From Chlorokybus atmophyticus (taxonomy: Eukaryota > Plantae > Mesostigma and Chlorokybus algae), in the NCBI GenBank assembly GCA_009103225.1, contig RHPI01002438.1:1060755-1124754 (forward strand): 64,000 bases of DNA. The letters are read 5' to 3'. How positions within the stretch are numbered: the stretch's first letter is position 1; the number at the start of each line of letters is the position of its first letter. This document shows, one piece after another, positions 25,584-62,991 of this stretch. The notes below the pieces were generated by a model, which did no database searches, had not been told where the DNA came from, and saw nothing but the letters and a program-made list of their open reading frames with translations. Both the position numbers and the translations under genes were made by a program.

Positions 25584-28245
25584 ATGCCGACGACAGGGGG
25601 AACGAGGCATCATGTAGGAGAGGACGTGCCTCCTGCTGTAGGGATGTCGGCGGCGATGCCCTCAGCGTCCTCTGGCTGGCCGCCCGCCGCCCCCACACCA
25701 CGCAGGGCTTCCGCTGTTGGGTTGCCCACCAATCTGTTCAGCAGCATGAGGTTTGGTTTGTATGCTTGCGTGCTGTCAAGCAATCAAGGCAGAGTTGTGC
25801 TTTTTGCAATGATCAATTCACTATTGCAAAGCACACAATGCTGCCTGCAGCTTGCATGCAACCTTGCACAGATTGGCTCCTGCATAGCACACGCCATGCT
25901 TGCAATCAGTATGTTAGTAAATTGTGTGTGAGGACGCTGATGAGTGGACTGGACTGATTGGCACACCCATCACATTGGAAAACTGTGCATTACTTCAGAG
26001 GGCATGCCTCATATCTTGTTGAGAAATCTAGAGGGTAGCACACACTTTTAGCAAGCTGTCATGGCAATCGTTACAATCAGACTTCATGCATGCGTCTGCG
26101 AGGAAAATTTGCAGCATGTAGTGCATCAACGTCAGTGTTGTCCACGCAGCATGAGCAGAGACCGGTCGATGCCAGATTTGCGCCAGGCGCTCCTGCCCCC
26201 CAAGTCAACATCATCATCGCACGTGCACGGCAATCATCACTCCAACAACTTGTCCCCGCCGCCGAGGCCGCCGTCGCCTTTTGTGGAGAGGCTGCAAAGG
26301 CAGTTTGGCAACCGCAGCTTTGCGTGGCCGGCGTTCCTCAAGCGCGAACACGCCCGTGGAGCACAGGATTCAACAGATGTATCTCGCCGGAAGGTTATTG
26401 ATGACATGACTGGCAAGGTTAACGTGCACCGCACAGGCTTCCCCAAGCGCATGCTCTACATGCAGGTTGGAACCAATATGTGACACACATTCACTTACCA
26501 CATAGCGCTCTCAGCATGCAGCGCAGTGGCGGCCGCTTTGCTAAATCTATCAGCATTATTAGGCTTGTCTTACAAAGGGGATGCAGCTACTCACTAATCA
26601 TTGGTGTGTCAGTTCCATTCTGTCATGTTTTGCTCATTCATGGCTGTCTGTGCAGGACATTTTTCACACACTGGTCAACCTTCCCAATTACGTGTTCACC
26701 CTCATATTCTTCATAATGTATTTCCTTCTCTTCGCCATCTTCGCCGTGCCATATCTATACCAGGTACATGGGTGTAACCTGCACAAGTCCTGCAAGCATC
26801 GTCACTACAGGCAAACCAAGTGTCGATACTGCATGCAGCACTCAATAACAGGTTGCTTACTGGGTATCACATAGTTTGCAGCTGTTCAAGTTATACAGGC
26901 CAGGCATTCATACAGTTTGATCATTTATTCAGGCGCATCCTTTGCGAGGAGGTTGCATTCCAGGCGTGTCCAACTTCCTGGACGCGTTGTGGTTCAGCGT
27001 ACAAACGAGCATGACAATTGGTTATGGCGGTGACATGGTTCCGGACCCTGCGTGCATTTTGACAAATGTGCTGATCACAATCCAGTCCGTTGCGAGCCTC
27101 CTCGTAGGGTACTCCATGCTTGGCCTTGTGTACACTCGCTTCTCCGCACCGTTCAACCGCACGCAGACTATTGTGTTCTCAGCCAACATGGTTATACATG
27201 AACTCGACGGCGTCATCTGCCTCATCTTTCGCGTCGGCAACGTCCGCAAGCACCAGGTGAGCTTACAATGAGATCGTGCTCATGTAACCAACACGTGATA
27301 TATGTGACATATGTGAAGTGAGCAAGTTGCATACACAGTGGCCTTATGAACACAGAATGCATACACCATGTGTAACGCGAAGCTGTCAAGACATTGGTCA
27401 CTTACCAATGTTGATATACAGATTATTGAGGCCAGTGTAAGGGTGCTGGCAGCAATGAACGATCCGCGAACTCCAGACGAGGAGAGCGTGTTCTTGTTTC
27501 ACCATTTGCAAGTGTTGGGCGGTGAGCGGCTTTTTCTCGGCCTGCCAGTGAGCGTGCCGCACCCCATCACGCCCGAAAGCCCGCTGTATGGCCTCAGCCT
27601 CCATGACATGGAGCAGCTGGACTTGGAGGTGTTGTGTCTGCTGGAAGGGATAGATGCATCCACTTCCGCCTCAATACAAGGTCAGAGCGGCATCTGTTGC
27701 ACGCGTAAAGGTGTTGTGATACGCGCCATGACCCTGTATATGTATGTGCCTGTTGCATTGCATTGACAGAGAGGTTCAACTACGAATTACATAGAGTTTG
27801 TAAGCTTCCTCTATCTGGTTGAACACATACACCTACAGTGTGTAACCTTCGTCTCTTCTCTCGTGCAGCGTGTCACTCGTACCTTCCGGAAGAGATCTGC
27901 TACAACTACCAATTTGTGTAAGCTGACTCACTTTGCACCAATCTCGTGCTGTTTGGTTTCTGTCTAACTTCTTTTGTGCCCACAGTAACATTGTGTCTCG
28001 AGGACCAGATGGCCGCCGAGTTGTGGTAAGCATTAGGGACTGCCATGTTTGTAGTATGCTGTGCGTGGTCACTGACTGTGGCTAAGCACAGTGCACAACT
28101 CGCGCACTTCGAGTGTTGCACTGTGTATTGTTGTTGCGCATAGCAGTTGAGCAATACATTGTTGGTGCAGGATTTTGCTAGGTTTGATGACATACTTCCA
28201 GTGGCAGACGATTGCATCCCGTCGCGCAACCCACACGATGTCTAG
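25584..28245 (+). CDS. Inward-rectifier K+ channel (Kir family), multi-exon
   Basis: DIFHTLVNLP, TM1, FLDALWFSVQTSMTIGYGG pore, TM2, IVFS, LIFRVGNVRKHQIIEASVR, LLEGIDASTSASIQ, HSYLPEEI, DFARFD. Exon 1 (25584-25750) joins in phase to 26150. Confidence 0.9.
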
Positions 28246-30487: not shown

Positions 30488-31255
30488 GACCTTGCGGAAA
30501 GGGTGGACTTTCACTTGTGTAACAACATTATGTGCACACATTACTGCCGCATGTAATAACTGCTTGTAATGCATGCGCGCATGCCGCATGGTGCAACTAT
30601 GCTTGAATGTGATCATCACAACCGCTACAATACCAATTGATTAACTGCAGAGAGCATCGGATTGTTCTTCTCATCATTATCAAGTTGCATGTGTTTGATT
30701 GTGACTTAAACTCTTCAGCAGCTGTCCTTATGCACATGCGCATGTGCAAAAACCATTGTGAGAAAAACCATCAAGCTGTTTTGCAATAGCGCTCAAGTTT
30801 AAAATTTGCATGTTCACAAAGCTGCTAGCTAATGTGATTGCAAAGTAGGGATCATAGTAACTTGCTAAGCCAATGGCGGCCACAATGTGAATTTCCGAAT
30901 CTGGCAATGATTAAATGTAGTGGTGTACACACAAGTTACATTGTCGCTGAAGCTGTGTGTGTGTGGAGAGGCGCATACACTCTGCAAGTGTACATGATAT
31001 ATGACGTGCTATTAGGCACATGCATGTAATGCACCACAACCACTCAAGCATTACATGCACACTAGTATACATTTCACCGTTGTCACCACCGGTCTAATCT
31101 ACAGCACTAAACTCCCAGCTACTAGACTTCCTCGTTGCACATGCATGTACATGCACACGTTTATCATTACCTGCCCAAACGGGCTGCTGCTAGTCGCTGG
31201 TGTTAACGGGCAGCATGGCAATCACAATGCCGACAACTCCCTCCCTTTCGCTCTC

Positions 31256-31763
31256 TGTAACAGTTGGGGCCCGACCACTAGGCTATAGTAGTAAAAGACA
31301 CTACCATGAGTGAGGTCTGTCACAATTTATCCCAATTCGTGACATTCCTCCCCAATTTAACCCATGAGTTCCTCATAATCCAATGAGGCACTAGCCCACG
31401 TCGCCGTTTTCGCGGCCGTACCACAATTGGTCTGCCCGCGGCCTATTGGATCCGGCCCACGAACGGTCCTGACCGACCGAACGGCCATCCTCACCGCGCG
31501 ACCTGCCATCGCAACGCGACCGTTCACGCGGCCTTGGGTTGAACTGGCTCGGCGCGCAGGTCGTGATCCCGCGCCCAGCCTAGGGCAAGCCGCCCCAAAT
31601 GTTTATGTTTTTGCCTTGGATCTGCCTCAGTCCCCTACGGGAATTGAACCAAAGACGTCAAGCTCCGAAACCATTGTAACAGTTGGGGCCCGACCATTAG
31701 GCTATGGTATAAAAAGACACTACCATGAGTGAGGTCTGTCACAATTTATCCCAATTCGTGACA
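31256..31763 (-). mobile_element. TRIM (non-autonomous LTR retrotransposon), family 1
   Basis: 89-bp LTRs at 31256-31344 and 31675-31763 with TG...CA ends and 4 mismatches. 5-bp TSD CTCTC at 31251-31255 and 31764-31768. PBS TGGTTTCGGAGC at 31673-31662 and PPT GGGGAGGAA at 31353-31345 on the minus strand. Confidence 0.93.
31640..31704 (-). promoter_or_regulatory. Putative type-2 Pol III promoter in TRIM 1 (A box in LTR, B box internal)
   Basis: A box TAGCCTAATGG (31704-31694) fits TRGCNNARYGG. B box GGTTCAATTCC (31650-31640) fits GGTTCRANNCC. The spacer is 43 nt. Confidence 0.7.
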
Positions 31764-32953
31764 CTCTCCCTCTTCCCCGCCACTCTCTGCATCTCGCCGC
31801 TCATGCCGCGGCCTTGGCTGCCATTCTACCCTAACCCTCGCTGCGTGCTGCCTACGTCAGCACTACACGCGCAGGGCCGTTCAGGTGGGAGCTGTTCTGC
31901 TGGTAGATTGGTGTCATTGGTAGTTCGGTGGTGCTGGCAGTTAGGTGCTGGTGGTTGGGTTGGGTGGTGGGGTTGGGCGCTCACGCCCTGGGCACGGGCA
32001 AGCATGCACGAGGAGCAAGCTGCGTTACCATGCAGCTTGCTCCTCGTGCATGCTCACTGTCCAGTCCAGTGTGCTACCTAGCGAAGAGTTTGGGCCAGCC
32101 CTTTGCAGCGTGTGTACTCGTGTGCTTGCTGTTATTAAGCCTGCCTGACCAACATGGTTGTGAGCACGGTTGAGCATTACTGCAATTGCTCGAAATGCTG
32201 CATGATTCAATAAGAGTCTATGTGCAGCTGCTATACGGCCTATACAGCAGACACCATTTGTGTAGTCCTATGCTAAAGTACATTGTTATAACTTATAATA
32301 TTGTCCTTCATGCTGAGCATGACGAAGTGCTGCAGCACCCGATTGATTAGCACTTGAACCACATCTGCAACTTCATAACAACCAATATGTGAATGTAAAC
32401 TCTGCAGTGCCTTTTTCCCATTGCACACAAACCCACTACCTACTTGTATGTGATTGGCTACAGTATGACATTACTATACAAGGTCCATTCTACGAGCATG
32501 TGCTGAGAAAAGCAAGTGCTTGGCCTCAGTGGTGTGCGCTCTGCTGATGCGGCCAGAGAACAGACTGAGAACCCTGCTCAGCGAGGCCTGGTGATTGCCC
32601 AAGACACATGCCTTGGCAGCAATCAATCGCACTTTGCATGACGGGAGTGGAGTGTAGATCGAGCTGGACTGACTTGTCCTTCCTGACTCTGCCACACTGT
32701 AGACGCGTGTCACGCTGGAAGCTTACTCGTCAAGAGGTCTGCTACTTAGAGTCAAGAAGGCTCATCACAAGCTTACCATGGGCGAGCGAGGAGACGCATT
32801 CGCCAATGTGACTTCTGAACTTCTGGTATTGCCGCACATCAGGTTCTGATCTGCTTAGCCGGACATATTCATCCCAGTCCCTTTTCCAGATCGCTTAAGC
32901 AATGAACCTGCACAAGACAGTAGAGTTAACCAATGTAAAGCTCAACTGTAATA

Positions 32954-33627: not shown

Positions 33628-34251
33628 NNNNNNNNNNNNNNNNNNNNNNNNNNNNNNNNNNNNNNNNNNNNNNNNNNNNNNNNNNNNNNNNNNNNNNNNN
33701 NNNNNNNNNNNNNNNNNNNNNNNNNNNNNNNNNNNNNNNNNNNNNNNNNNNNNNNNNNNNNNNNNNNNNNNNNNNNNNNNNNNNNNNNNNNNNNNNNNNN
33801 NNNNNNNNNNNNNNNNNNNNNNNNNNNNNNNNNNNNNNNNNNNNNNNNNNNNNNNNNNNNNNNNNNNNNNNNNNNNNNNNNNNNNNNNNNNNNNNNNNNN
33901 NNNNNNNNNNNNNNNNNNNNNNNNNNNNNNNNNNNNNNNNNNNNNNNNNNNNNNNNNNNNNNNNNNNNNNNNNNNNNNNNNNNNNNNNNNNNNNNNNNNN
34001 NNNNNNNNNNNNNNNNNNNNNNNNNNNNNNNNNNNNNNNNNNNNNNNNNNNNNNNNNNNNNNNNNNNNNNNNNNNNNNNNNNNNNNNNNNNNNNNNNNNN
34101 NNNNNNNNNNNNNNNNNNNNNNNNNNNNNNNNNNNNNNNNNNNNNNNNNNNNNNNNNNNNNNNNNNNNNNNNNNNNNNNNNNNNNNNNNNNNNNNNNNNN
34201 NNNNNNNNNNNNNNNNNNNNNNNNNNNNNNNNNNNNNNNNNNNNNNNNNNN
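33628..34251. other. Assembly gap (N run) flanked by G runs
   Basis: Run of N. Confidence 1.
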
Positions 34252-35108: not shown

Positions 35109-38100
35109 CTAAGCTAGAAGCGCCTTCACAACAGCCCTCACGCTGAGCTTGCGCAAATCAGTGTAGTCCTGCCCGCATCCGACAAACATGATGGGAGCGC
35201 CGCTGGTGTACGCCATGGACAAGGCAGCACCCACCTTGTCATCAATCGTATCAAACTTAGTCAGCAGGATGCCATCGATCAAGCGAGGAGTGGTCAGAGT
35301 GGACAAGTCTGCAAGCTTCTGATTGAACTTGGTCAACTGATCAACCGCGTCGTTGCCAACGAGGGCCTCGCCGACAAACAGCACAAGATCGGGCTCGTTC
35401 ATTGTGACGAGTTTGGCCAGCGCACGCATAAGCGGCTCGTTGTCTTGCATGCGTCCCGCCGTGTCAATCAGCACAACATCCTTGCGGTCACGCTGGGCCT
35501 GCTTGATAGCGTCCATGGCAACGGCAGCGGGGTCCTTCTCGTACCCGCGCTCAAATAGTGGGACTTGCAGGCGGCTGCAATGCGTTCTCAGCTGCTCGAC
35601 TGCGCCGGCTCTGAATGTGTCGCACGCAGCGATGAGCACAGAGATGTCGTGTTGCTGAAGCCAATACGCCACTTTGGCTAGGTTTGTGGACTTGCCGACG
35701 CCGTTCACGCCAACAAAGACAATCGTGTACGGGCTGCCACGCTCGCGTGCCCCGAGCACGTCGCGCAGGATGTCAGTCGACCTGCGAGGGGTAAGTATGC
35801 GCACTAACGCCTCTTCCATGGCGGAGCGCACGATGGTGGACACACGCGTGAAGGACGCCTGCCGCCTCCCGACCAAACTTGCCGACACGCTTTCGCAAAG
35901 CTTCTCGGCTATCTCCTCAGCGACGTTCTTTGTCATCAGCTTCTCCTTCAATGCCTTCAGCACAGGCTGCACATCCTCCCTTTCAAGAGCCTGCTTTCCT
36001 GTGACACTGCAACACACAACCAATGGTTCAAAAAGACATACGCGTAAACACGTGCGTGCACATGCACACAGCATAGACCTTAACACGTGCATGCATCCAT
36101 GCATATGCACGGCAGATGTGTGTGCATGTAGTTGCCAACCGCTTACGCATGAGCACACACTCACAGAAATGAATATTTTCAATTTAAGCAGTCCCAGAAA
36201 GCGACTGACTGGGCTTGAAGCGCACCTGCTGAATACAGACGTCAACCAGCCACCCTTCTTCGCCGCACCAGAGCCAGCAGCTTGATCGCTTCCATCCTCT
36301 TCGCCATCAGAGTCATCAGAGGCCGCTGCCTCCTCTTCATCCATAAACGACTGACCAATCGCTGCTGGGCGATGCTGAGCTTCGCCCAAGCTCTCATATC
36401 CACTTGACACACCCGCATCACTGAAGTCAAGCTTCTCTGGCCCATCAACCCACTTCCTCATCACCTGCACAAAGACACAACAAGATCCTAGTCATCAGTG
36501 TCAACACCACATCACGTGCCAACAAGCACACACGTCCACAACCATCTCACCTTGCTGGGCTTCTTCTTGTCCGAGTCCTTCTTCTCATCGCCGCTCTTCG
36601 CAGTGGTGGAAGTAATAGCCTTAGACCCTTTCTTCCCGCCGGCCTTTGCGCGCAACTTGGACACGTCGAACGCACCATTGCCACCGTCACTCTTATCAGG
36701 AGTGCCGTTGGCAAGCGGAGGCTTGCCGGAGGCGGGCTTTGCATCTGAATCCGCTTCATCCTCATCATCTTTGCCCTTTGAAACACCAACAATATATTGA
36801 GACAAATTCTGCAACAAGCATGGATGCCATTCAATGTGTGTCTCAACCTTGACCATGCATAGCACCTGTTGTGATAAGGCGGTGGAGCCCGCGCCAGCTC
36901 TTGATGATGCTCCCGAAGTTGGTTTCGCCTTCTCTTTTGATGACGGCAGACGCTTGTCCTGATAAGACGCGGCTGCTTTGGGTCTTCGTGCTGCATCTGC
37001 TTGATCCTCGGCTTCGCGTAAGAGGTGATCGAAGCGAGCAGCTAACTTGGGATAGTCATACACACCTGCACGATGTTAAACTGTGATCAACTACTGTGAT
37101 GCGTACCTAGCATGGAACGCCGCACAATGGTTTGTGTGCTTGTGTGCGTGCATGCTTGCATGTGTGCGTGTGCACGTGCGTATATGCACATGCGCGTGTA
37201 TGTCTGTATGTGTACACGCAGGAGGGCATATGTGTGTGAGCGTATACGTGCGCGCATGCACTTGTGCGCTCGCGTGCGCGCTCATTCATGTGCACGTGCG
37301 TGCGTGTGTGCACGCACACGAAAAGATATGTTAGAAGCCAGTCATGTCTTCTGGGTACCTGATCGGTAGTGACTGGCAGCAAACTCCTCTTTAAGCATGT
37401 GCAGCAGTTGGTCCACGTACAGCAATGTGAGCAGCTTTGAGTAGGCAGCCACGAAGACAAGCCCAAGCTCGTTATGCATGCACCACGCCAGTACCTAAAG
37501 CAACAACAAGTGTTCAAGGTCTAATGATGCAGTTCTCTCATTGATTATTTGTTATTTCTGTAATCTGTCTTTGCCAGCTTGGGTATATGCTGCTTTGCAC
37601 CAGGATCCTGGCTTGGCTAATCCTGGCTAAGGCTGGCTTCATTGGTTGCAATTGGGACGGCAGCTTAAGATGCTTGCAGATTACAGCGAATGTTCCTTTA
37701 CGACTTTCAACAACGCTACGACGAAAGTGAAGTTGATATGCAAGCACTAACTCTTTGTTCTCAAATGCAATTGGTTAATCACCAACTCAAAGTGATGCAT
37801 AGTTCCAGCACTGACACGCTGAACACGCTGAGCGCAGCACAGCAGAGTCAACAAATTGTTGTGCAAAGTTGCCTTGGTTCTGCATAGAGAGAGAGTTGTT
37901 TGCTCTTTAAAAAATTGACCTTCAACAAGCTGAACACAGACTGCTAAACAGAATAGCCTTGAGAAACCAAACACTAGCGTTGACACTGTGACTGCTAATG
38001 TGTATGTTGCGAGAATACATTGACAAGCTGCAAGCAGCAGAGACATGTTGTGACCTGAGCACCAATGGTAACTTTCTGAGCTCCAGCTGATCCCTGACCC

Positions 38101-44458: not shown

Positions 44459-44563
44459 AATTGACATCAATACTGAGTGTTGCTGTCGGTGCATTGATGG
44501 TGCACGCCGTTCTTGTTGGGGCACTCGTGGCATGAAGATGATGTTTGCTTTATGCTCTCTCTC

Positions 44564-45079
44564 TATGACAAACCACTAGGCCACAAAAGCACGAAGTGTG
44601 TTCTATGGCCATTGTGGCGTTATTATCAAGTCGTCCCGTGACATTCCCCTCCACTTAGGTATGTAATGCCCTCATTAGATGTGAGTTTTTATAGAGCATC
44701 TCGTCAGTAGCAGTGGAAGCGCTTTGTAACCATCACTGAGTAGTCGCAGCGCGCATTATGCTGCTGAGTGACCGACTGTCAGTCGCCATCAGGCAAGTCG
44801 CGCGGTACTACCTAGCGGCGGCTCCAGGTACGCGCGACGCGTCGGAATGACCGACTGGCGTCCGGCAATTCGCGCGTTGCACTGAGCAAACGCGCAACCC
44901 ATCATTTTTGGTAATAACAACGACCTCAAAAATACTTCTTGGTCTGCCGCGAAGCGGTTTCGACCTCAGGGTCTTTCGGCCTCAAGCTCCGATGACCAAT
45001 GTAACCAACCACTAGGCCACAAAAGCATGAAGTGTGTTTGGTGGCCATTGTGGCGTTATTATCAAGTCGTCCCGTGACT
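44564..45079 (-). mobile_element. TRIM (non-autonomous LTR retrotransposon), family 2
   Basis: 80-bp LTRs at 44564-44643 and 45000-45079 with 8 mismatches and slightly decayed termini. TSD CTCTC at 44559-44563 and 45080-45084 within a (CT)n tract. PBS TGGTCATCGGAGC at 44998-44986. PPT GGAGGGGAA at 44652-44644. Confidence 0.88.
44956..45019 (-). promoter_or_regulatory. Putative type-2 Pol III promoter in TRIM 2
   Basis: A box TGGCCTAGTGG (45019-45009). B-box-like AGGTCGAAACC (44966-44956), 2 mismatches to consensus. The spacer is 42 nt. Confidence 0.55.
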
Positions 45080-45832
45080 CTCTCTCTCTCGCGCGCGCGC
45101 GCAATACCCTCCATTGCATCGCTATCAAGTGCTTCCACAAGACTTCAAAACCAGGTGGTTCACGAGTGCATGTAAACATAGAGGGTAACCTTATCCGCTA
45201 CTAATATACTAGTATGTATTTGCAATTGCATATTGGTGACCTCATAAAATAAGCAGTTCATGTTGATATTATGCAGTCGGTGGATTCATGTTGCAACCAA
45301 TTCTAATGCAACACACGCTTTGTGGCATTGCACTTCATGCAATCTTATCAATAACTGCGCTGATCTTACATATGTTGTTTTCTGAGGGGGGACCCGATGC
45401 GAAGTGTTACATATGTATAAACCATTGCGTACGTATGTATGGTTATTTAACTTCTGTGTTTTTATGTTATTTTTTCATGTTTTACACAATATCGCGACAT
45501 GTCAGCGTAACGTCACATTATGTAGTAATTGTGCCCATTATGTACTGTAACTAATATACCATTGCTAAACGTGCAACTTGTTATATGTGCATGCATGTGA
45601 TGGAATATATACGCTTAAAGAATGATAACAAATACACATGGTGTACCATGCACGATTTCACAGTGCATGTTCATCATGCAAAACGGGGAATCTCACCTCT
45701 TGCAAATCGTATTTTTAGGGAGAGTTGCTGATGAATTCCAAGATAAAATGCTTTGTCTTGATAACTGTCTACCTTTCAACATTGGATGAGATTTAAAAAA
45801 ACATTCAATGCGTGTAGGACCCCCCCCCCCCC

Positions 45833-46063
45833 NNNNNNNNNNNNNNNNNNNNNNNNNNNNNNNNNNNNNNNNNNNNNNNNNNNNNNNNNNNNNNNNNNNN
45901 NNNNNNNNNNNNNNNNNNNNNNNNNNNNNNNNNNNNNNNNNNNNNNNNNNNNNNNNNNNNNNNNNNNNNNNNNNNNNNNNNNNNNNNNNNNNNNNNNNNN
46001 NNNNNNNNNNNNNNNNNNNNNNNNNNNNNNNNNNNNNNNNNNNNNNNNNNNNNNNNNNNNNNN
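45833..46063. other. Assembly gap flanked by poly-C
   Basis: Run of N. Confidence 1.
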
Positions 46064-62084: not shown

Positions 62085-62991
62085 NNNNNNNNNNNNNNNN
62101 NNNNNNNNNNNNNNNNNNNNNNNNNNNNNNNNNNNNNNNNNNNNNNNNNNNNNNNNNNNNNNNNNNNNNNNNNNNNNNNNNNNNNNNNNNNNNNNNNNNN
62201 NNNNNNNNNNNNNNNNNNNNNNNNNNNNNNNNNNNNNNNNNNNNNNNNNNNNNNNNNNNNNNNNNNNNNNNNNNNNNNNNNNNNNNNNNNNNNNNNNNNN
62301 NNNNNNNNNNNNNNNNNNNNNNNNNNNNNNNNNNNNNNNNNNNNNNNNNNNNNNNNNNNNNNNNNNNNNNNNNNNNNNNNNNNNNNNNNNNNNNNNNNNN
62401 NNNNNNNNNNNNNNNNNNNNNNNNNNNNNNNNNNNNNNNNNNNNNNNNNNNNNNNNNNNNNNNNNNNNNNNNNNNNNNNNNNNNNNNNNNNNNNNNNNNN
62501 NNNNNNNNNNNNNNNNNNNNNNNNNNNNNNNNNNNNNNNNNNNNNNNNNNNNNNNNNNNNNNNNNNNNNNNNNNNNNNNNNNNNNNNNNNNNNNNNNNNN
62601 NNNNNNNNNNNNNNNNNNNNNNNNNNNNNNNNNNNNNNNNNNNNNNNNNNNNNNNNNNNNNNNNNNNNNNNNNNNNNNNNNNNNNNNNNNNNNNNNNNNN
62701 NNNNNNNNNNNNNNNNNNNNNNNNNNNNNNNNNNNNNNNNNNNNNNNNNNNNNNNNNNNNNNNNNNNNNNNNNNNNNNNNNNNNNNNNNNNNNNNNNNNN
62801 NNNNNNNNNNNNNNNNNNNNNNNNNNNNNNNNNNNNNNNNNNNNNNNNNNNNNNNNNNNNNNNNNNGAGCGAGGGAGGGAGCGAGCGAGGGAGGGAGCGA
62901 GCGAGGGAGGGAGCGGGAAAGGGAGGGAGGGAGCGGGAGGGGGAGGGAGGGAGGGGGGGAGGGGGGGAGCGAGCGAGCGAGCGAGCGAGCG

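What the first reader, a model, noticed from the sequence alone, without database searches (positions are those of the whole stretch)
31256..31763. Miniature LTR retroelement with a split tRNA-type Pol III promoter straddling its primer-binding site
Seen in sequence: an intact TRIM (LTRs, PBS, PPT, 5-bp TSD). On its sense strand there is a perfect A box (TAGCCTAATGG) in the last 30 nt of the LTR, then the LTR end and PBS, then a perfect B box (GGTTCAATTCC) 43 nt after the A box. A T4-T5 run sits 6-7 nt upstream of the A box in each LTR, and the internal region has no T4 run. Established: Pol III-driven TRIMs exist (Cassandra carries 5S sequence inside its LTRs, and from memory tRNA-like LTR families have also been reported), but with the promoter inside the LTR. 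Inference: here the B box lies outside the LTR, so only the 5' LTR forms a full promoter while the 3' or solo LTR is silent. The promoter would travel in the RNA as in a SINE, and transcription could end at the T run in the 3' LTR. This would be a SINE-like promoter on an LTR replication chassis.
Basis: partly seen in the sequence, partly recalled or inferred. Interest (0 to 1): 0.9.

Follow-up and report, generated by a model that had tools for sequence, protein, structure and literature searches.

The report
Mini retrotransposon with split tRNA-type promoter
A 508-bp non-coding LTR retrotransposon has the two promoter boxes of a tRNA gene on either side of its repeat end and primer-binding site, so RNA polymerase III may copy it; this is a new layout of a kind described in 2024, and its function is untested.

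Summary
Window 31256-31763 (sense = minus strand) is a real terminal-repeat retrotransposon in miniature (TRIM). It has 89-nt LTRs, a 5-bp target duplication (CTCTC), an initiator-tRNA-type primer-binding site (PBS), a polypurine tract (PPT) and no coding capacity. A contig from a related organism carries the empty site, and other copies have other flanks, so the family is multi-copy and has moved.

The A box sits in the LTR at element positions 60-70. The B box sits behind the PBS at 114-124, 43 nt after the A box, and is the only B-box match in 128 kb. The pair did not occur in 200 simulated windows.

A second family at 44564-45079, which blastn cannot align to the first, keeps the boxes at positions 61-71 and 114-124 although its LTR ends 9 nt earlier. 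This argues for constraint on the promoter geometry.

Function as a Pol III promoter is inferred, not shown, because no RNA run was available. Four points count against it:
- No tRNA model matches.
- An RNA starting after the T run and ending in it would have no R repeat.
- Family B has an internal T5 run.
- A Pol II reading fits the same TATA-like motif.

The closest known kind is Helenus/TRIMp3 (Kojima 2024), where both boxes lie inside the LTR. I call this a new variant of a known kind. This scan had already noted the same layout on other pieces of this genome.

The parts
31764..31768 (-). target-site duplication CTCTC (upstream side in element sense)
   Evidence: The empty-site contig in run X2 joins 31251 to 31765 and skips 513 nt, which is 508 + 5.
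31675..31763 (-). 5' LTR (89 nt, TG..CA ends)
   Evidence: Direct repeat, 85/89 identical to 31256-31344. Contigs of other copies diverge exactly at 31763.
31744..31749 (-). TATA-like / AAUAAA-like ATAAAT, LTR positions 15-20 (repeated at 31325-31330)
   Evidence: Family B has ATAATAA at positions 18-24. It lies about 25-30 nt upstream of the start site predicted from box A. Its role is inferred.
31711..31715 (-). T5 run 6 nt upstream of the A box (T4 in the 3' LTR and in a contig of another copy)
   Evidence: 31710-11 read differently in a contig of another copy. It sits in the loop of a predicted LTR hairpin.
31694..31704 (-). A box TAGCCTAATGG, LTR positions 60-70
   Evidence: At 31697 all contigs of other copies read C, which gives the strict TRGCNNAGTGG form also present in the 3' LTR.
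31662..31673 (-). primer-binding site TGGTTTCGGAGC (initiator-Met type, one base after the LTR)
   Evidence: Other copies read two different bases at 31668-69. The Selaginella Helenus PBS is TGGTATCGGAGC.
31640..31650 (-). B box GGTTCAATTCC, element positions 114-124, 43 nt after the A box
   Evidence: Only GGTTCRANNCC match in the window on either strand. No variant seen in 7 contigs of other copies.
31615..31626 (-). block GGCAGATCCAAG shared with family B, after a short hairpin that overlaps the end of the B box
   Evidence: Function unknown.
31354..31661 (-). non-coding internal region, G+C-rich and strongly folded
   Evidence: No Pfam hit for the only long ORF, which is antisense, and no homologues. 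The fold of 31293-31718 has z = -3.0. Most sites that vary among copies lie here.
31345..31353 (-). polypurine tract GGGGAGGAA directly before the 3' LTR
   Evidence: Family B has GGAGGGGAA at the same place.
31256..31344 (-). 3' LTR, with A box 31275-31285 and T4 31293-31296 but no B box behind it
   Evidence: Contigs of other copies diverge at 31256 and 31344.
31251..31255 (-). target-site duplication CTCTC (downstream side in element sense)
44564..45079 (-). second TRIM family (B) with the same layout: 80-nt LTRs, T4, A box 45019->45009, PBS 44998->44986, B-like box AGGTCGAAACC 44966->44956, sense-strand T5 44932->44928, PPT 44652->44644

Best explanation
This is one somewhat aged copy of a multi-copy, recently mobile, non-coding TRIM. 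It is mobilised in trans by a Copia-type LTR retrotransposon, as the 5-bp target duplication and initiator-tRNA-type PBS indicate.

Its 5' end carries a tRNA-gene-type (type 2) internal Pol III promoter that the LTR/PBS junction cuts in two. In order, the parts are:
- a TATA-like motif at LTR positions 15-20;
- a short T run;
- box A at positions 60-70 in the LTR;
- the LTR end and the PBS;
- box B at positions 114-124.

The most likely mechanism (inferred):
- TFIIIC binds A and B only where an LTR is followed by PBS and box B, which means the 5' LTR or an inner LTR of a tandem array.
- Pol III starts near LTR positions 40-52 and transcribes the about 420-nt body.
- It stops at the T run of the 3' LTR, so the LTR is a join of a 3'-end part (U3, ending in the terminator) and a 5'-end part (U5, starting just before box A) with a very short R.
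- Reverse transcription then proceeds as in any LTR element.

Shown: the anatomy, mobility, non-chance motif pair and constraint on box positions between two families. Inferred: promoter activity, start and stop sites, and that the Pol III RNA is the template that gets reverse-transcribed.
For: TRIM anatomy.

Mobility and copy number:
- An empty-site contig in run X2 joins 31251 to 31765, skipping 513 nt.
- Contigs with other flanks break exactly at 31256, 31344 and 31763.
- 14 and 59 contigs were laid in two runs.

The box pair is not chance. There is one B-box match in 128 kb, it lies 43 nt after an A box, and the pair occurred 0 times in 200 simulations.

Other copies carry the strict A box and an unchanged B box.

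Family B is not alignable by blastn. It still keeps the TATA-like motif, T run, A box (61-71) and a B-like box at the same element positions (114-124). That box matches 9/11 and keeps G53, T55, C56, A58 and C61. The box spacing is 42 nt against 43 nt, although its LTR is 9 nt shorter, so the junction moves between fixed boxes.

The T run lies 1-7 nt before box A in all four LTRs, which is where a join between an RNA's 3' terminator and its 5' start would fall.

Precedent: Cassandra is a Pol III-transcribed TRIM with an 18-bp terminal duplication. Helenus and Ajax carry tRNA or 5S promoters in their LTRs.
Against: - No transcript data. No RNA run was listed, and contigs cannot show RNA ends.
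- No tRNA model match: ARAGORN found 0 and only a marginal call with relaxed thresholds. Rfam found no tRNA hit at E <= 10 on either family.
- The T run lies at or just downstream of the start site expected from box A. Either R is absent, or Pol III must read through T4-5 a few bases after starting.
- Family B has a sense-strand T5 24 nt after its B box, which should end a Pol III transcript at about 100 nt.
- Absence of internal T4 in family A has P about 0.34 by chance.
- Within the family the whole LTR, not only the boxes, is invariant among the laid contigs, so within-family conservation does not single out the boxes.
- ATAAAT at LTR positions 15-20 could serve as both Pol II TATA box and poly(A) signal.
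Confidence: 0.45

Rival explanations
1. It is an ordinary Pol II-transcribed TRIM. ATAAAT at LTR positions 15-20 acts as TATA box in the 5' LTR and as poly(A) signal in the 3' LTR. The A and B boxes are a relic of a tRNA- or SINE-derived ancestor, or are kept for another cis function. One such function would be U5/leader contacts with the primer tRNA or packaging, as in the extended primer interactions of Ty1 (from general knowledge).
For: - The TATA-like motif is conserved in position in both families.
- Most TRIMs are thought to be Pol II elements ('TRIMp2').
- Family B's internal T5 is harmless for Pol II but not for Pol III.
- No tRNA-like fold is detectable.
- The conserved blocks also include LTR ends, PBS, PPT and GGCAGA.CCAAG, so conservation is not specific to the boxes.
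Against: - It gives no reason why both boxes stay at fixed positions and spacing (43 and 42 nt) while the LTR boundary between them shifts by 9 nt.
- It does not explain why the family keeps textbook A and B boxes or why a T run sits just before box A in all four LTRs.
- An 89-nt LTR leaves almost no room for separate Pol II start and poly(A) sites either.
Confidence: 0.33
2. The boxes are functional, but not to make the genomic RNA. One option is that they drive a short Pol III RNA of about 100 nt covering U5, PBS and box B. The other is that they only recruit TFIIIC, like 'extra TFIIIC' sites or tDNA barriers, for example to keep the copy in open chromatin. Full-length template RNA would then come from another promoter or from read-through.
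For: - In family B the unit from T run through A box and B box to T5 has the size and layout of a small Pol III gene (element positions about 45-152).
- An earlier scan note on another copy also speaks of a built-in terminator (unchecked).
- The box geometry is conserved.
Against: - Family A has no such terminator.
- No small-RNA evidence exists.
- No known benefit of such an RNA to a TRIM. The idea is speculative.
Confidence: 0.15
3. The A-box and B-box matches are chance resemblances in an otherwise ordinary TRIM.
For: - A-box-like strings are common (18 in the window against 16.5 expected).
- No tRNA model matches.
Against: - The B box is unique in 128 kb.
- The pair occurred 0 times in 200 simulations.
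- The same layout occurs in a second diverged family at the same positions.
- The boxes are unchanged in contigs of other copies from two organisms.
Confidence: 0.03

Closest known systems
Helenus (tRNA-bearing TRIMs; Kojima 2024, PMC10886601), e.g. Helenus-1_SMo of Selaginella
   Same: - Short non-coding LTR element with a 5-bp target duplication, as in the plant and fungal Helenus.
- The PBS is of the same initiator-tRNA type: TGGTATCGGAGC in Helenus-1_SMo, TGGTTTCGGAGC here.
- It has a PPT, tRNA-type A and B boxes and a short T run, and Pol III transcription is presumed.
   Different: - In Helenus the whole tRNA-like sequence (A and B boxes) lies inside the LTR and is often recognisable as a tRNA. 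In the LTR consensuses I read (Selaginella, Torymus) a T run follows it inside the LTR.
- Here only box A is in the LTR and box B lies behind the PBS.
- The T run lies upstream of box A.
- No tRNA model matches.
- The LTR is shorter (89 nt against 120 nt in Helenus-1_SMo).
- A 3' or solo LTR therefore lacks half the promoter.
Cassandra (5S-bearing TRIM; Kalendar et al. 2008 as summarised in PMC7215508 and PMC10886601)
   Same: - TRIM with an internal Pol III promoter and terminator.
- Very short terminal RNA duplication (18 bp).
- Initiator-tRNA PBS, and found in the plant lineage.
   Different: - Cassandra's promoter is 5S type (box A, IE, box C) and lies wholly inside each LTR.
- No 5S similarity was found here: Rfam returned no hits on the window.
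tRNA-derived SINEs (SINE2)
   Same: - The A and B boxes travel inside the RNA near its 5' end.
- Short and non-coding, dependent on another element's reverse transcriptase, with a degenerate tRNA-like head.
   Different: - SINEs have no LTRs, PBS or PPT.
- They are copied by LINE target-primed reverse transcription and have variable target duplications and a LINE-like or A-rich tail.
- This element has all the hallmarks of LTR-type replication.
Canonical plant TRIMs (Witte et al. 2001 type; 'TRIMp2' in Kojima's terms)
   Same: Size, LTR-PBS-PPT-LTR anatomy, 5-bp target duplication and non-coding interior.
   Different: As far as described, canonical TRIMs carry no Pol III boxes. The LTRs here are at the short end of the range.

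Membership tests
TRIM (terminal-repeat retrotransposon in miniature) | Two short direct LTRs with TG..CA ends and a total length well under 1 kb | tested here: met
   89-nt LTRs, 85/89 identical, in a 508-bp element.
TRIM (terminal-repeat retrotransposon in miniature) | PBS next to the 5' LTR and PPT next to the 3' LTR | tested here: met
   TGGTTTCGGAGC lies one base after the LTR, and GGGGAGGAA abuts the 3' LTR.
TRIM (terminal-repeat retrotransposon in miniature) | Target-site duplication and evidence of insertion | tested here: met
   CTCTC on both sides. The empty-site contig skips 513 = 508 + 5 nt.
TRIM (terminal-repeat retrotransposon in miniature) | No protein-coding capacity | tested here: met
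   The only long ORF is antisense, has no Pfam hit and has no homologues.
Helenus (Kojima 2024) | tRNA-derived sequence contained in the LTRs (boxes A and B both inside the LTR) | tested here: not met
   Box A is at LTR positions 60-70, but box B is at element positions 114-124, 25 nt beyond the LTR end and behind the PBS.
Helenus (Kojima 2024) | Detectable similarity of that sequence to tRNA or SINE2 | tested here: inconclusive
   - No Rfam tRNA hit at E <= 10, and ARAGORN calls it only at relaxed thresholds.
- Censor against Repbase, the paper's own method, was not available.
TRIMp3 (TRIMs with a Pol III promoter; umbrella term of Kojima 2024) | Sequence of a small-RNA-gene-type internal Pol III promoter in the element | tested here: met
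   A and B boxes are 43 nt apart, are not chance, and recur in a second family.
TRIMp3 (TRIMs with a Pol III promoter; umbrella term of Kojima 2024) | Transcription by RNA polymerase III | not testable with these tools
   No RNA run was listed, and only contigs were laid.
Cassandra | 5S rRNA-derived sequence with box A / IE / box C in the LTR | tested here: not met
   No 5S or any other Rfam family was found on the window or around the element.
tRNA-derived SINE | No LTRs, with a LINE-type 3' end and target-primed insertion | tested here: not met
   LTRs, PBS, PPT and a fixed 5-bp duplication are present.

The most novel reading that the evidence does not exclude
The replicating RNA is a Pol III transcript laid out like a stretched pre-tRNA. 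It begins next to the T run just before box A and ends in the T run of the 3' LTR. Each LTR is then simply the RNA's terminator end joined to its start, with little or no R repeat.

First-strand transfer would rely on a few bases of homology. It might also be helped by the predicted pairing of the 7-8 nt on either side of the T run, which brings the RNA's two ends together.

Because box B lies outside the LTR, solo and 3' LTRs are automatically promoter-dead. This would be a SINE-like transcription unit that replicates by the LTR route.
Probability: 0.25. Interest if true: 0.8.

Novelty: new variant of a known kind. Interest (0 to 1): 0.58.

Why it matters
Pol III-driven LTR elements are a recently named and barely tested class. 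Only Cassandra has transcript evidence.

A promoter split by the LTR/PBS junction would show a different and economical design:
- The LTR can shrink to about 80-90 nt.
- The promoter is rebuilt only in a complete 5' end.
- Solo and 3' LTRs do not fire into neighbouring genes.

It would also test how short the terminal repeat of an LTR retroelement RNA can be. It would extend this class from land plants, fungi and animals to what earlier scan notes call an early-branching green alga. If the boxes prove inactive, the finding is simply two young TRIM families with a tRNA-like relic.

Tried and rejected
- tRNA identity: ARAGORN on the window found 0 genes. Rfam found no tRNA hit at E <= 10 on 1.5 kb, on 126 nt and on family B. 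ARAGORN at 85% threshold with introns gave one marginal 'tRNA-Cys with intron' call for family A and none for B. An earlier scan note calls the module a degenerate glycine tRNA. I could not reproduce that.
- Primer read-through origin: I checked by eye whether the sequence after the PBS is the complement of a tRNA T arm. It does not fit.
- More copies as DNA: a metagenome scan with a pattern that left the B box free found 0 hits. A protein-space search with the 101-aa spurious ORF across the element also found nothing. blastn of both elements against the window found only the elements themselves, with no solo LTRs and no autonomous partner.
- RNA evidence: the run search listed no RNA run, and two of the four laid runs held nothing.
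- 'No internal T4 run' as evidence: rejected, because the chance probability is 0.34.
- Within-family conservation of the boxes: not informative, because the whole LTR is invariant among the laid contigs.
- Organism: a neighbouring gene for the signal-recognition-particle (SRP) receptor alpha subunit matches land-plant and green-algal proteins at 77-79%. This shows a green-lineage genome. The name Chlorokybus comes only from earlier scan notes.
- Literature: searches for a described split layout found none in the held library.

Full report
**What is there**

On the + strand two 89-nt direct repeats lie at 31256-31344 and 31675-31763. They are 85/89 identical and have TG..CA ends. The flanks carry CTCTC on both sides (31251-31255 and 31764-31768).

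The sense strand is the minus strand:
- One base after the repeat at 31675-31763 comes TGGTTTCGGAGC (31673->31662). This is a primer-binding site of the initiator-tRNA type. The Selaginella Helenus element has TGGTATCGGAGC.
- Directly before the other repeat lies the purine tract GGGGAGGAA (31353->31345).

The interior has no coding capacity. The only long ORF is antisense, has no Pfam hit and has no homologues. The element is therefore a 508-bp TRIM.

**It is a real, mobile, multi-copy family**

I laid the contigs of four public runs on 31200-31820. Two runs from two differently labelled organisms held the family, with 14 and 59 contigs at 80-100% identity.
- Contigs from other copies run into unrelated sequence exactly at 31256, 31344 and 31763, which confirms the LTR borders.
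- One contig of run X2 joins 31251 to 31765 and skips 513 nt (508 + 5). This is the empty target site with a single CTCTC.
- Contig depth over the LTR is tens of times that of the flanks. This is only a rough sign of copy number.

All runs were contig sets of DNA or unknown type. Nothing can be said about RNA.

**The promoter-like motifs**

On the sense strand the features lie as follows:

| Feature | Sequence | Window position | Place in element |
|---|---|---|---|
| A box, 5' LTR | TAGCCTAATGG | 31704->31694 | LTR 60-70, ends 19 nt before the LTR end |
| B box | GGTTCAATTCC | 31650->31640 | element 114-124, 43 nt after the A box, 11 nt after the PBS |
| T5 run, 5' LTR | TTTTT | 31715->31711 | ends 6 nt before the A box |
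| T4 run, 3' LTR | TTTT | 31296->31293 | ends 7 nt before that LTR's A box |

A-box-like strings are common: 18 in the window against 16.5 expected. The B box is the only match to GGTTCRANNCC on either strand of the 64-kb window (0.48 expected). An A box followed 25-65 nt later by a B box did not occur in 200 simulated windows.

The 5' LTR's A box departs from the strict consensus TRGCNNAGTGG at one base. The 3' LTR of this copy and all contigs of other copies have the strict form (31697 reads C in them). None of the 7 contigs covering the B box shows a variant.

This copy also differs from the other copies at three places:
- two adjacent bases in the PBS (31668-69);
- two bases just before the B box (31651-52);
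- two bases that turn T4 into T5 (31710-11).

Its two LTRs differ at four positions, all between LTR positions 53 and 67. It is therefore an older, slightly decayed member, not a pristine one.

**Comparison with a second family in the same window**

At 44564-45079, also minus sense, lies a 516-bp TRIM with 80-nt LTRs (72/80 identical) in a CT microsatellite. blastn finds no similarity between the two elements. A global alignment shows co-linear short blocks.

| Feature | Family A (31256-31763) | Family B (44564-45079) |
|---|---|---|
| LTR start | TGTCACG | AGTCACG (5' LTR), TGTCACG (3' LTR) |
| TATA-like motif | positions 15-20 | positions 18-24 |
| T run | 49-53 | 56-59 |
| A box | 60-70 | 61-71, TGGCCTAGTGG |
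| LTR end | GTTACA, position 89 | GTTACA, position 80 |
| PBS | TGGTTTCGGAGC | TGGTCATCGGAGC |
| B box | 114-124, GGTTCAATTCC | 114-124, AGGTCGAAACC |
| A-to-B spacing | 43 nt | 42 nt |

Both also share GGCAGA.CCAAG after the B box, and a PPT followed by TGTCACG.

Family B's B-like box matches 9 of 11 positions and keeps the invariant T-loop positions G53, T55, C56, A58 and C61. The boxes sit at the same distance from the element start and from each other, although the LTR/PBS junction between them lies 9 nt earlier in B. The segments add up as 19+1+12+11 in A and 9+1+13+19 in B. This is the best available argument that the box geometry itself is under constraint and is not a by-product of LTR or PBS conservation. 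It rests on two sequences only.

**What does not fit a simple Pol III story**

1. The region is not recognisable as a tRNA. ARAGORN finds nothing at default settings. At relaxed thresholds it gives only a marginal intron-containing call in family A. Rfam's tRNA model gives no hit at E <= 10 in either family. Only the D-arm/A-box and T-loop/B-box parts look tRNA-like, as in many SINE heads.
2. LTR replication needs a repeat (R) at both RNA ends. In tRNA genes the start lies about 12-20 nt upstream of box A (established knowledge). Here that means LTR positions 40-48, just upstream of the T run. R would then be about 5-13 nt, and Pol III would have to read through T4-5 within its first dozen bases. 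Short R is not unheard of: 18 bp is quoted for Cassandra.
3. Family B has a sense-strand T5 24 nt after its B box (44932->44928). In that copy it would end a Pol III transcript at about 100 nt. I could not test whether this is typical of family B.
4. The lack of an internal T4 in family A happens by chance in about a third of sequences of that length and composition.
5. Among the laid contigs the whole LTR is invariant, and variable sites cluster in the interior. Within-family data therefore do not single out the boxes.
6. ATAAAT at LTR positions 15-20 could be a Pol II TATA box and poly(A) signal. It also suits the upstream TATA-like elements of plant tRNA genes (general knowledge).

**A structural observation**

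In family A the 7-8 nt before the T run and the 7-8 nt after it are complementary. The 3' LTR folds into a 9-bp stem with the T run in and beside the loop. In family B a different stem (GGCCA.../...GUGGCC) also encloses the T run and overlaps box A. Its 3' LTR copy folds with z = -4.4.

When the hypothetical RNA from T run to T run (31718->31293) is folded, its two ends pair and close the molecule. The whole RNA folds better than all 100 shuffles, with z = -3.0. The LTR could thus be read as the terminator end of an RNA joined to its start. This is inference only.

**Comparison with known elements**

- Kojima (2024, PMC10886601) defined Helenus as TRIMs with a tRNA-derived sequence in their LTRs, and proposed 'TRIMp3' for TRIMs with Pol III promoters (Cassandra, Helenus, Ajax). 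The only plant-lineage Helenus is from Selaginella.
- That element's LTR contains a complete tRNA-like sequence with both boxes, followed by TTTT six bases before the LTR end. Its PBS is TGGTATCGGAGC.
- The element here shares the TRIM chassis, PBS type, 5-bp duplication and type 2 boxes. It fails the defining Helenus feature, because box B is outside the LTR, and its T run is upstream of box A.
- It has no 5S similarity, so it is not Cassandra or Ajax.
- It is not a SINE, because it has LTRs, PBS and PPT.
- I found no description of a split layout in the held literature.

I therefore file it as a new variant within the proposed TRIMp3 kind, with promoter function unproven.

**Earlier notes of this scan**

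The scan has flagged this layout many times on other pieces of the same genome. Three follow-ups reached the same verdict: real pattern, function untested. They name the organism Chlorokybus. I only showed that a neighbouring SRP-receptor alpha gene is 77-79% identical to green-plant proteins.

New in this report:
- the empty-site contig;
- the copy-to-copy differences at the boxes and the PBS;
- the finding that the boxes stay fixed while the LTR junction shifts between families;
- the internal T5 of family B;
- the R-length problem;
- the hairpin around the T run.

My model searches do not support a recognisable tRNA.

**Verdict**

| Claim | Probability |
|---|---|
| TRIM identity and mobility | about 0.97 |
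| Motif pair is a non-chance, constrained tRNA-type promoter signature | about 0.9 |
| Pol III actually uses it | about 0.5 |
| The Pol III transcript is the replicative template | about 0.35-0.45 |

I built no family consensus. A mobility assay with a rebuilt element is referred.

Noticed in passing
window 44564-45079 (minus sense): A second TRIM family with 80-nt LTRs (72/80 identical) has the same order of T run, A box, PBS and B-like box at the same element positions. It also has a sense-strand T5 at 44932-44928, and one LTR terminus is changed (AGTCAC instead of TGTCAC).
   Followed up: partly
window 31251-31255 / 31764-31768 and 44555-44563 / 45080-45090: Both TRIMs in the window sit in CT-rich or (CT)n sequence with the duplication CTCTC. 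Flanks of other copies seen in contigs are not CT-rich, so this is at most a preference.
   Followed up: partly
window 32001-32054: A perfect 23-bp inverted repeat with an 8-nt loop lies 240 nt from the element. It gives sub-threshold miRNA-precursor hits in Rfam (best 33 bits against a 53-bit cut-off). On the minus strand the loop region reads TGGTAACGCAGC, which resembles the family's PBS.
   Followed up: no
window 31651-52, 31668-69, 31710-11: Three of this copy's differences from other copies are changes of two adjacent bases. The four differences between its own LTRs all fall within LTR positions 53-67, which cover the T run, the hairpin arm and the A box.
   Followed up: no
window 31813 onward: A contig of run X1 follows the right flank up to 31813 and then continues with similar but clearly diverged sequence. 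Run X2 has the empty site. The public runs are therefore from relatives of the assembled strain, not the strain itself.
   Followed up: no
window 33628-34251, 45833-46063, 62085-62866: Assembly gaps (runs of N). The last one follows a long (GA)n microsatellite.
   Followed up: no
window 26942-27766 (+) and 35109-36470 (-): The neighbouring genes are a K+-channel-like exon (TIGYG motif) and the SRP receptor alpha subunit (77-79% identical to plant proteins). The TRIM lies in the non-coding stretch between them.
   Followed up: partly
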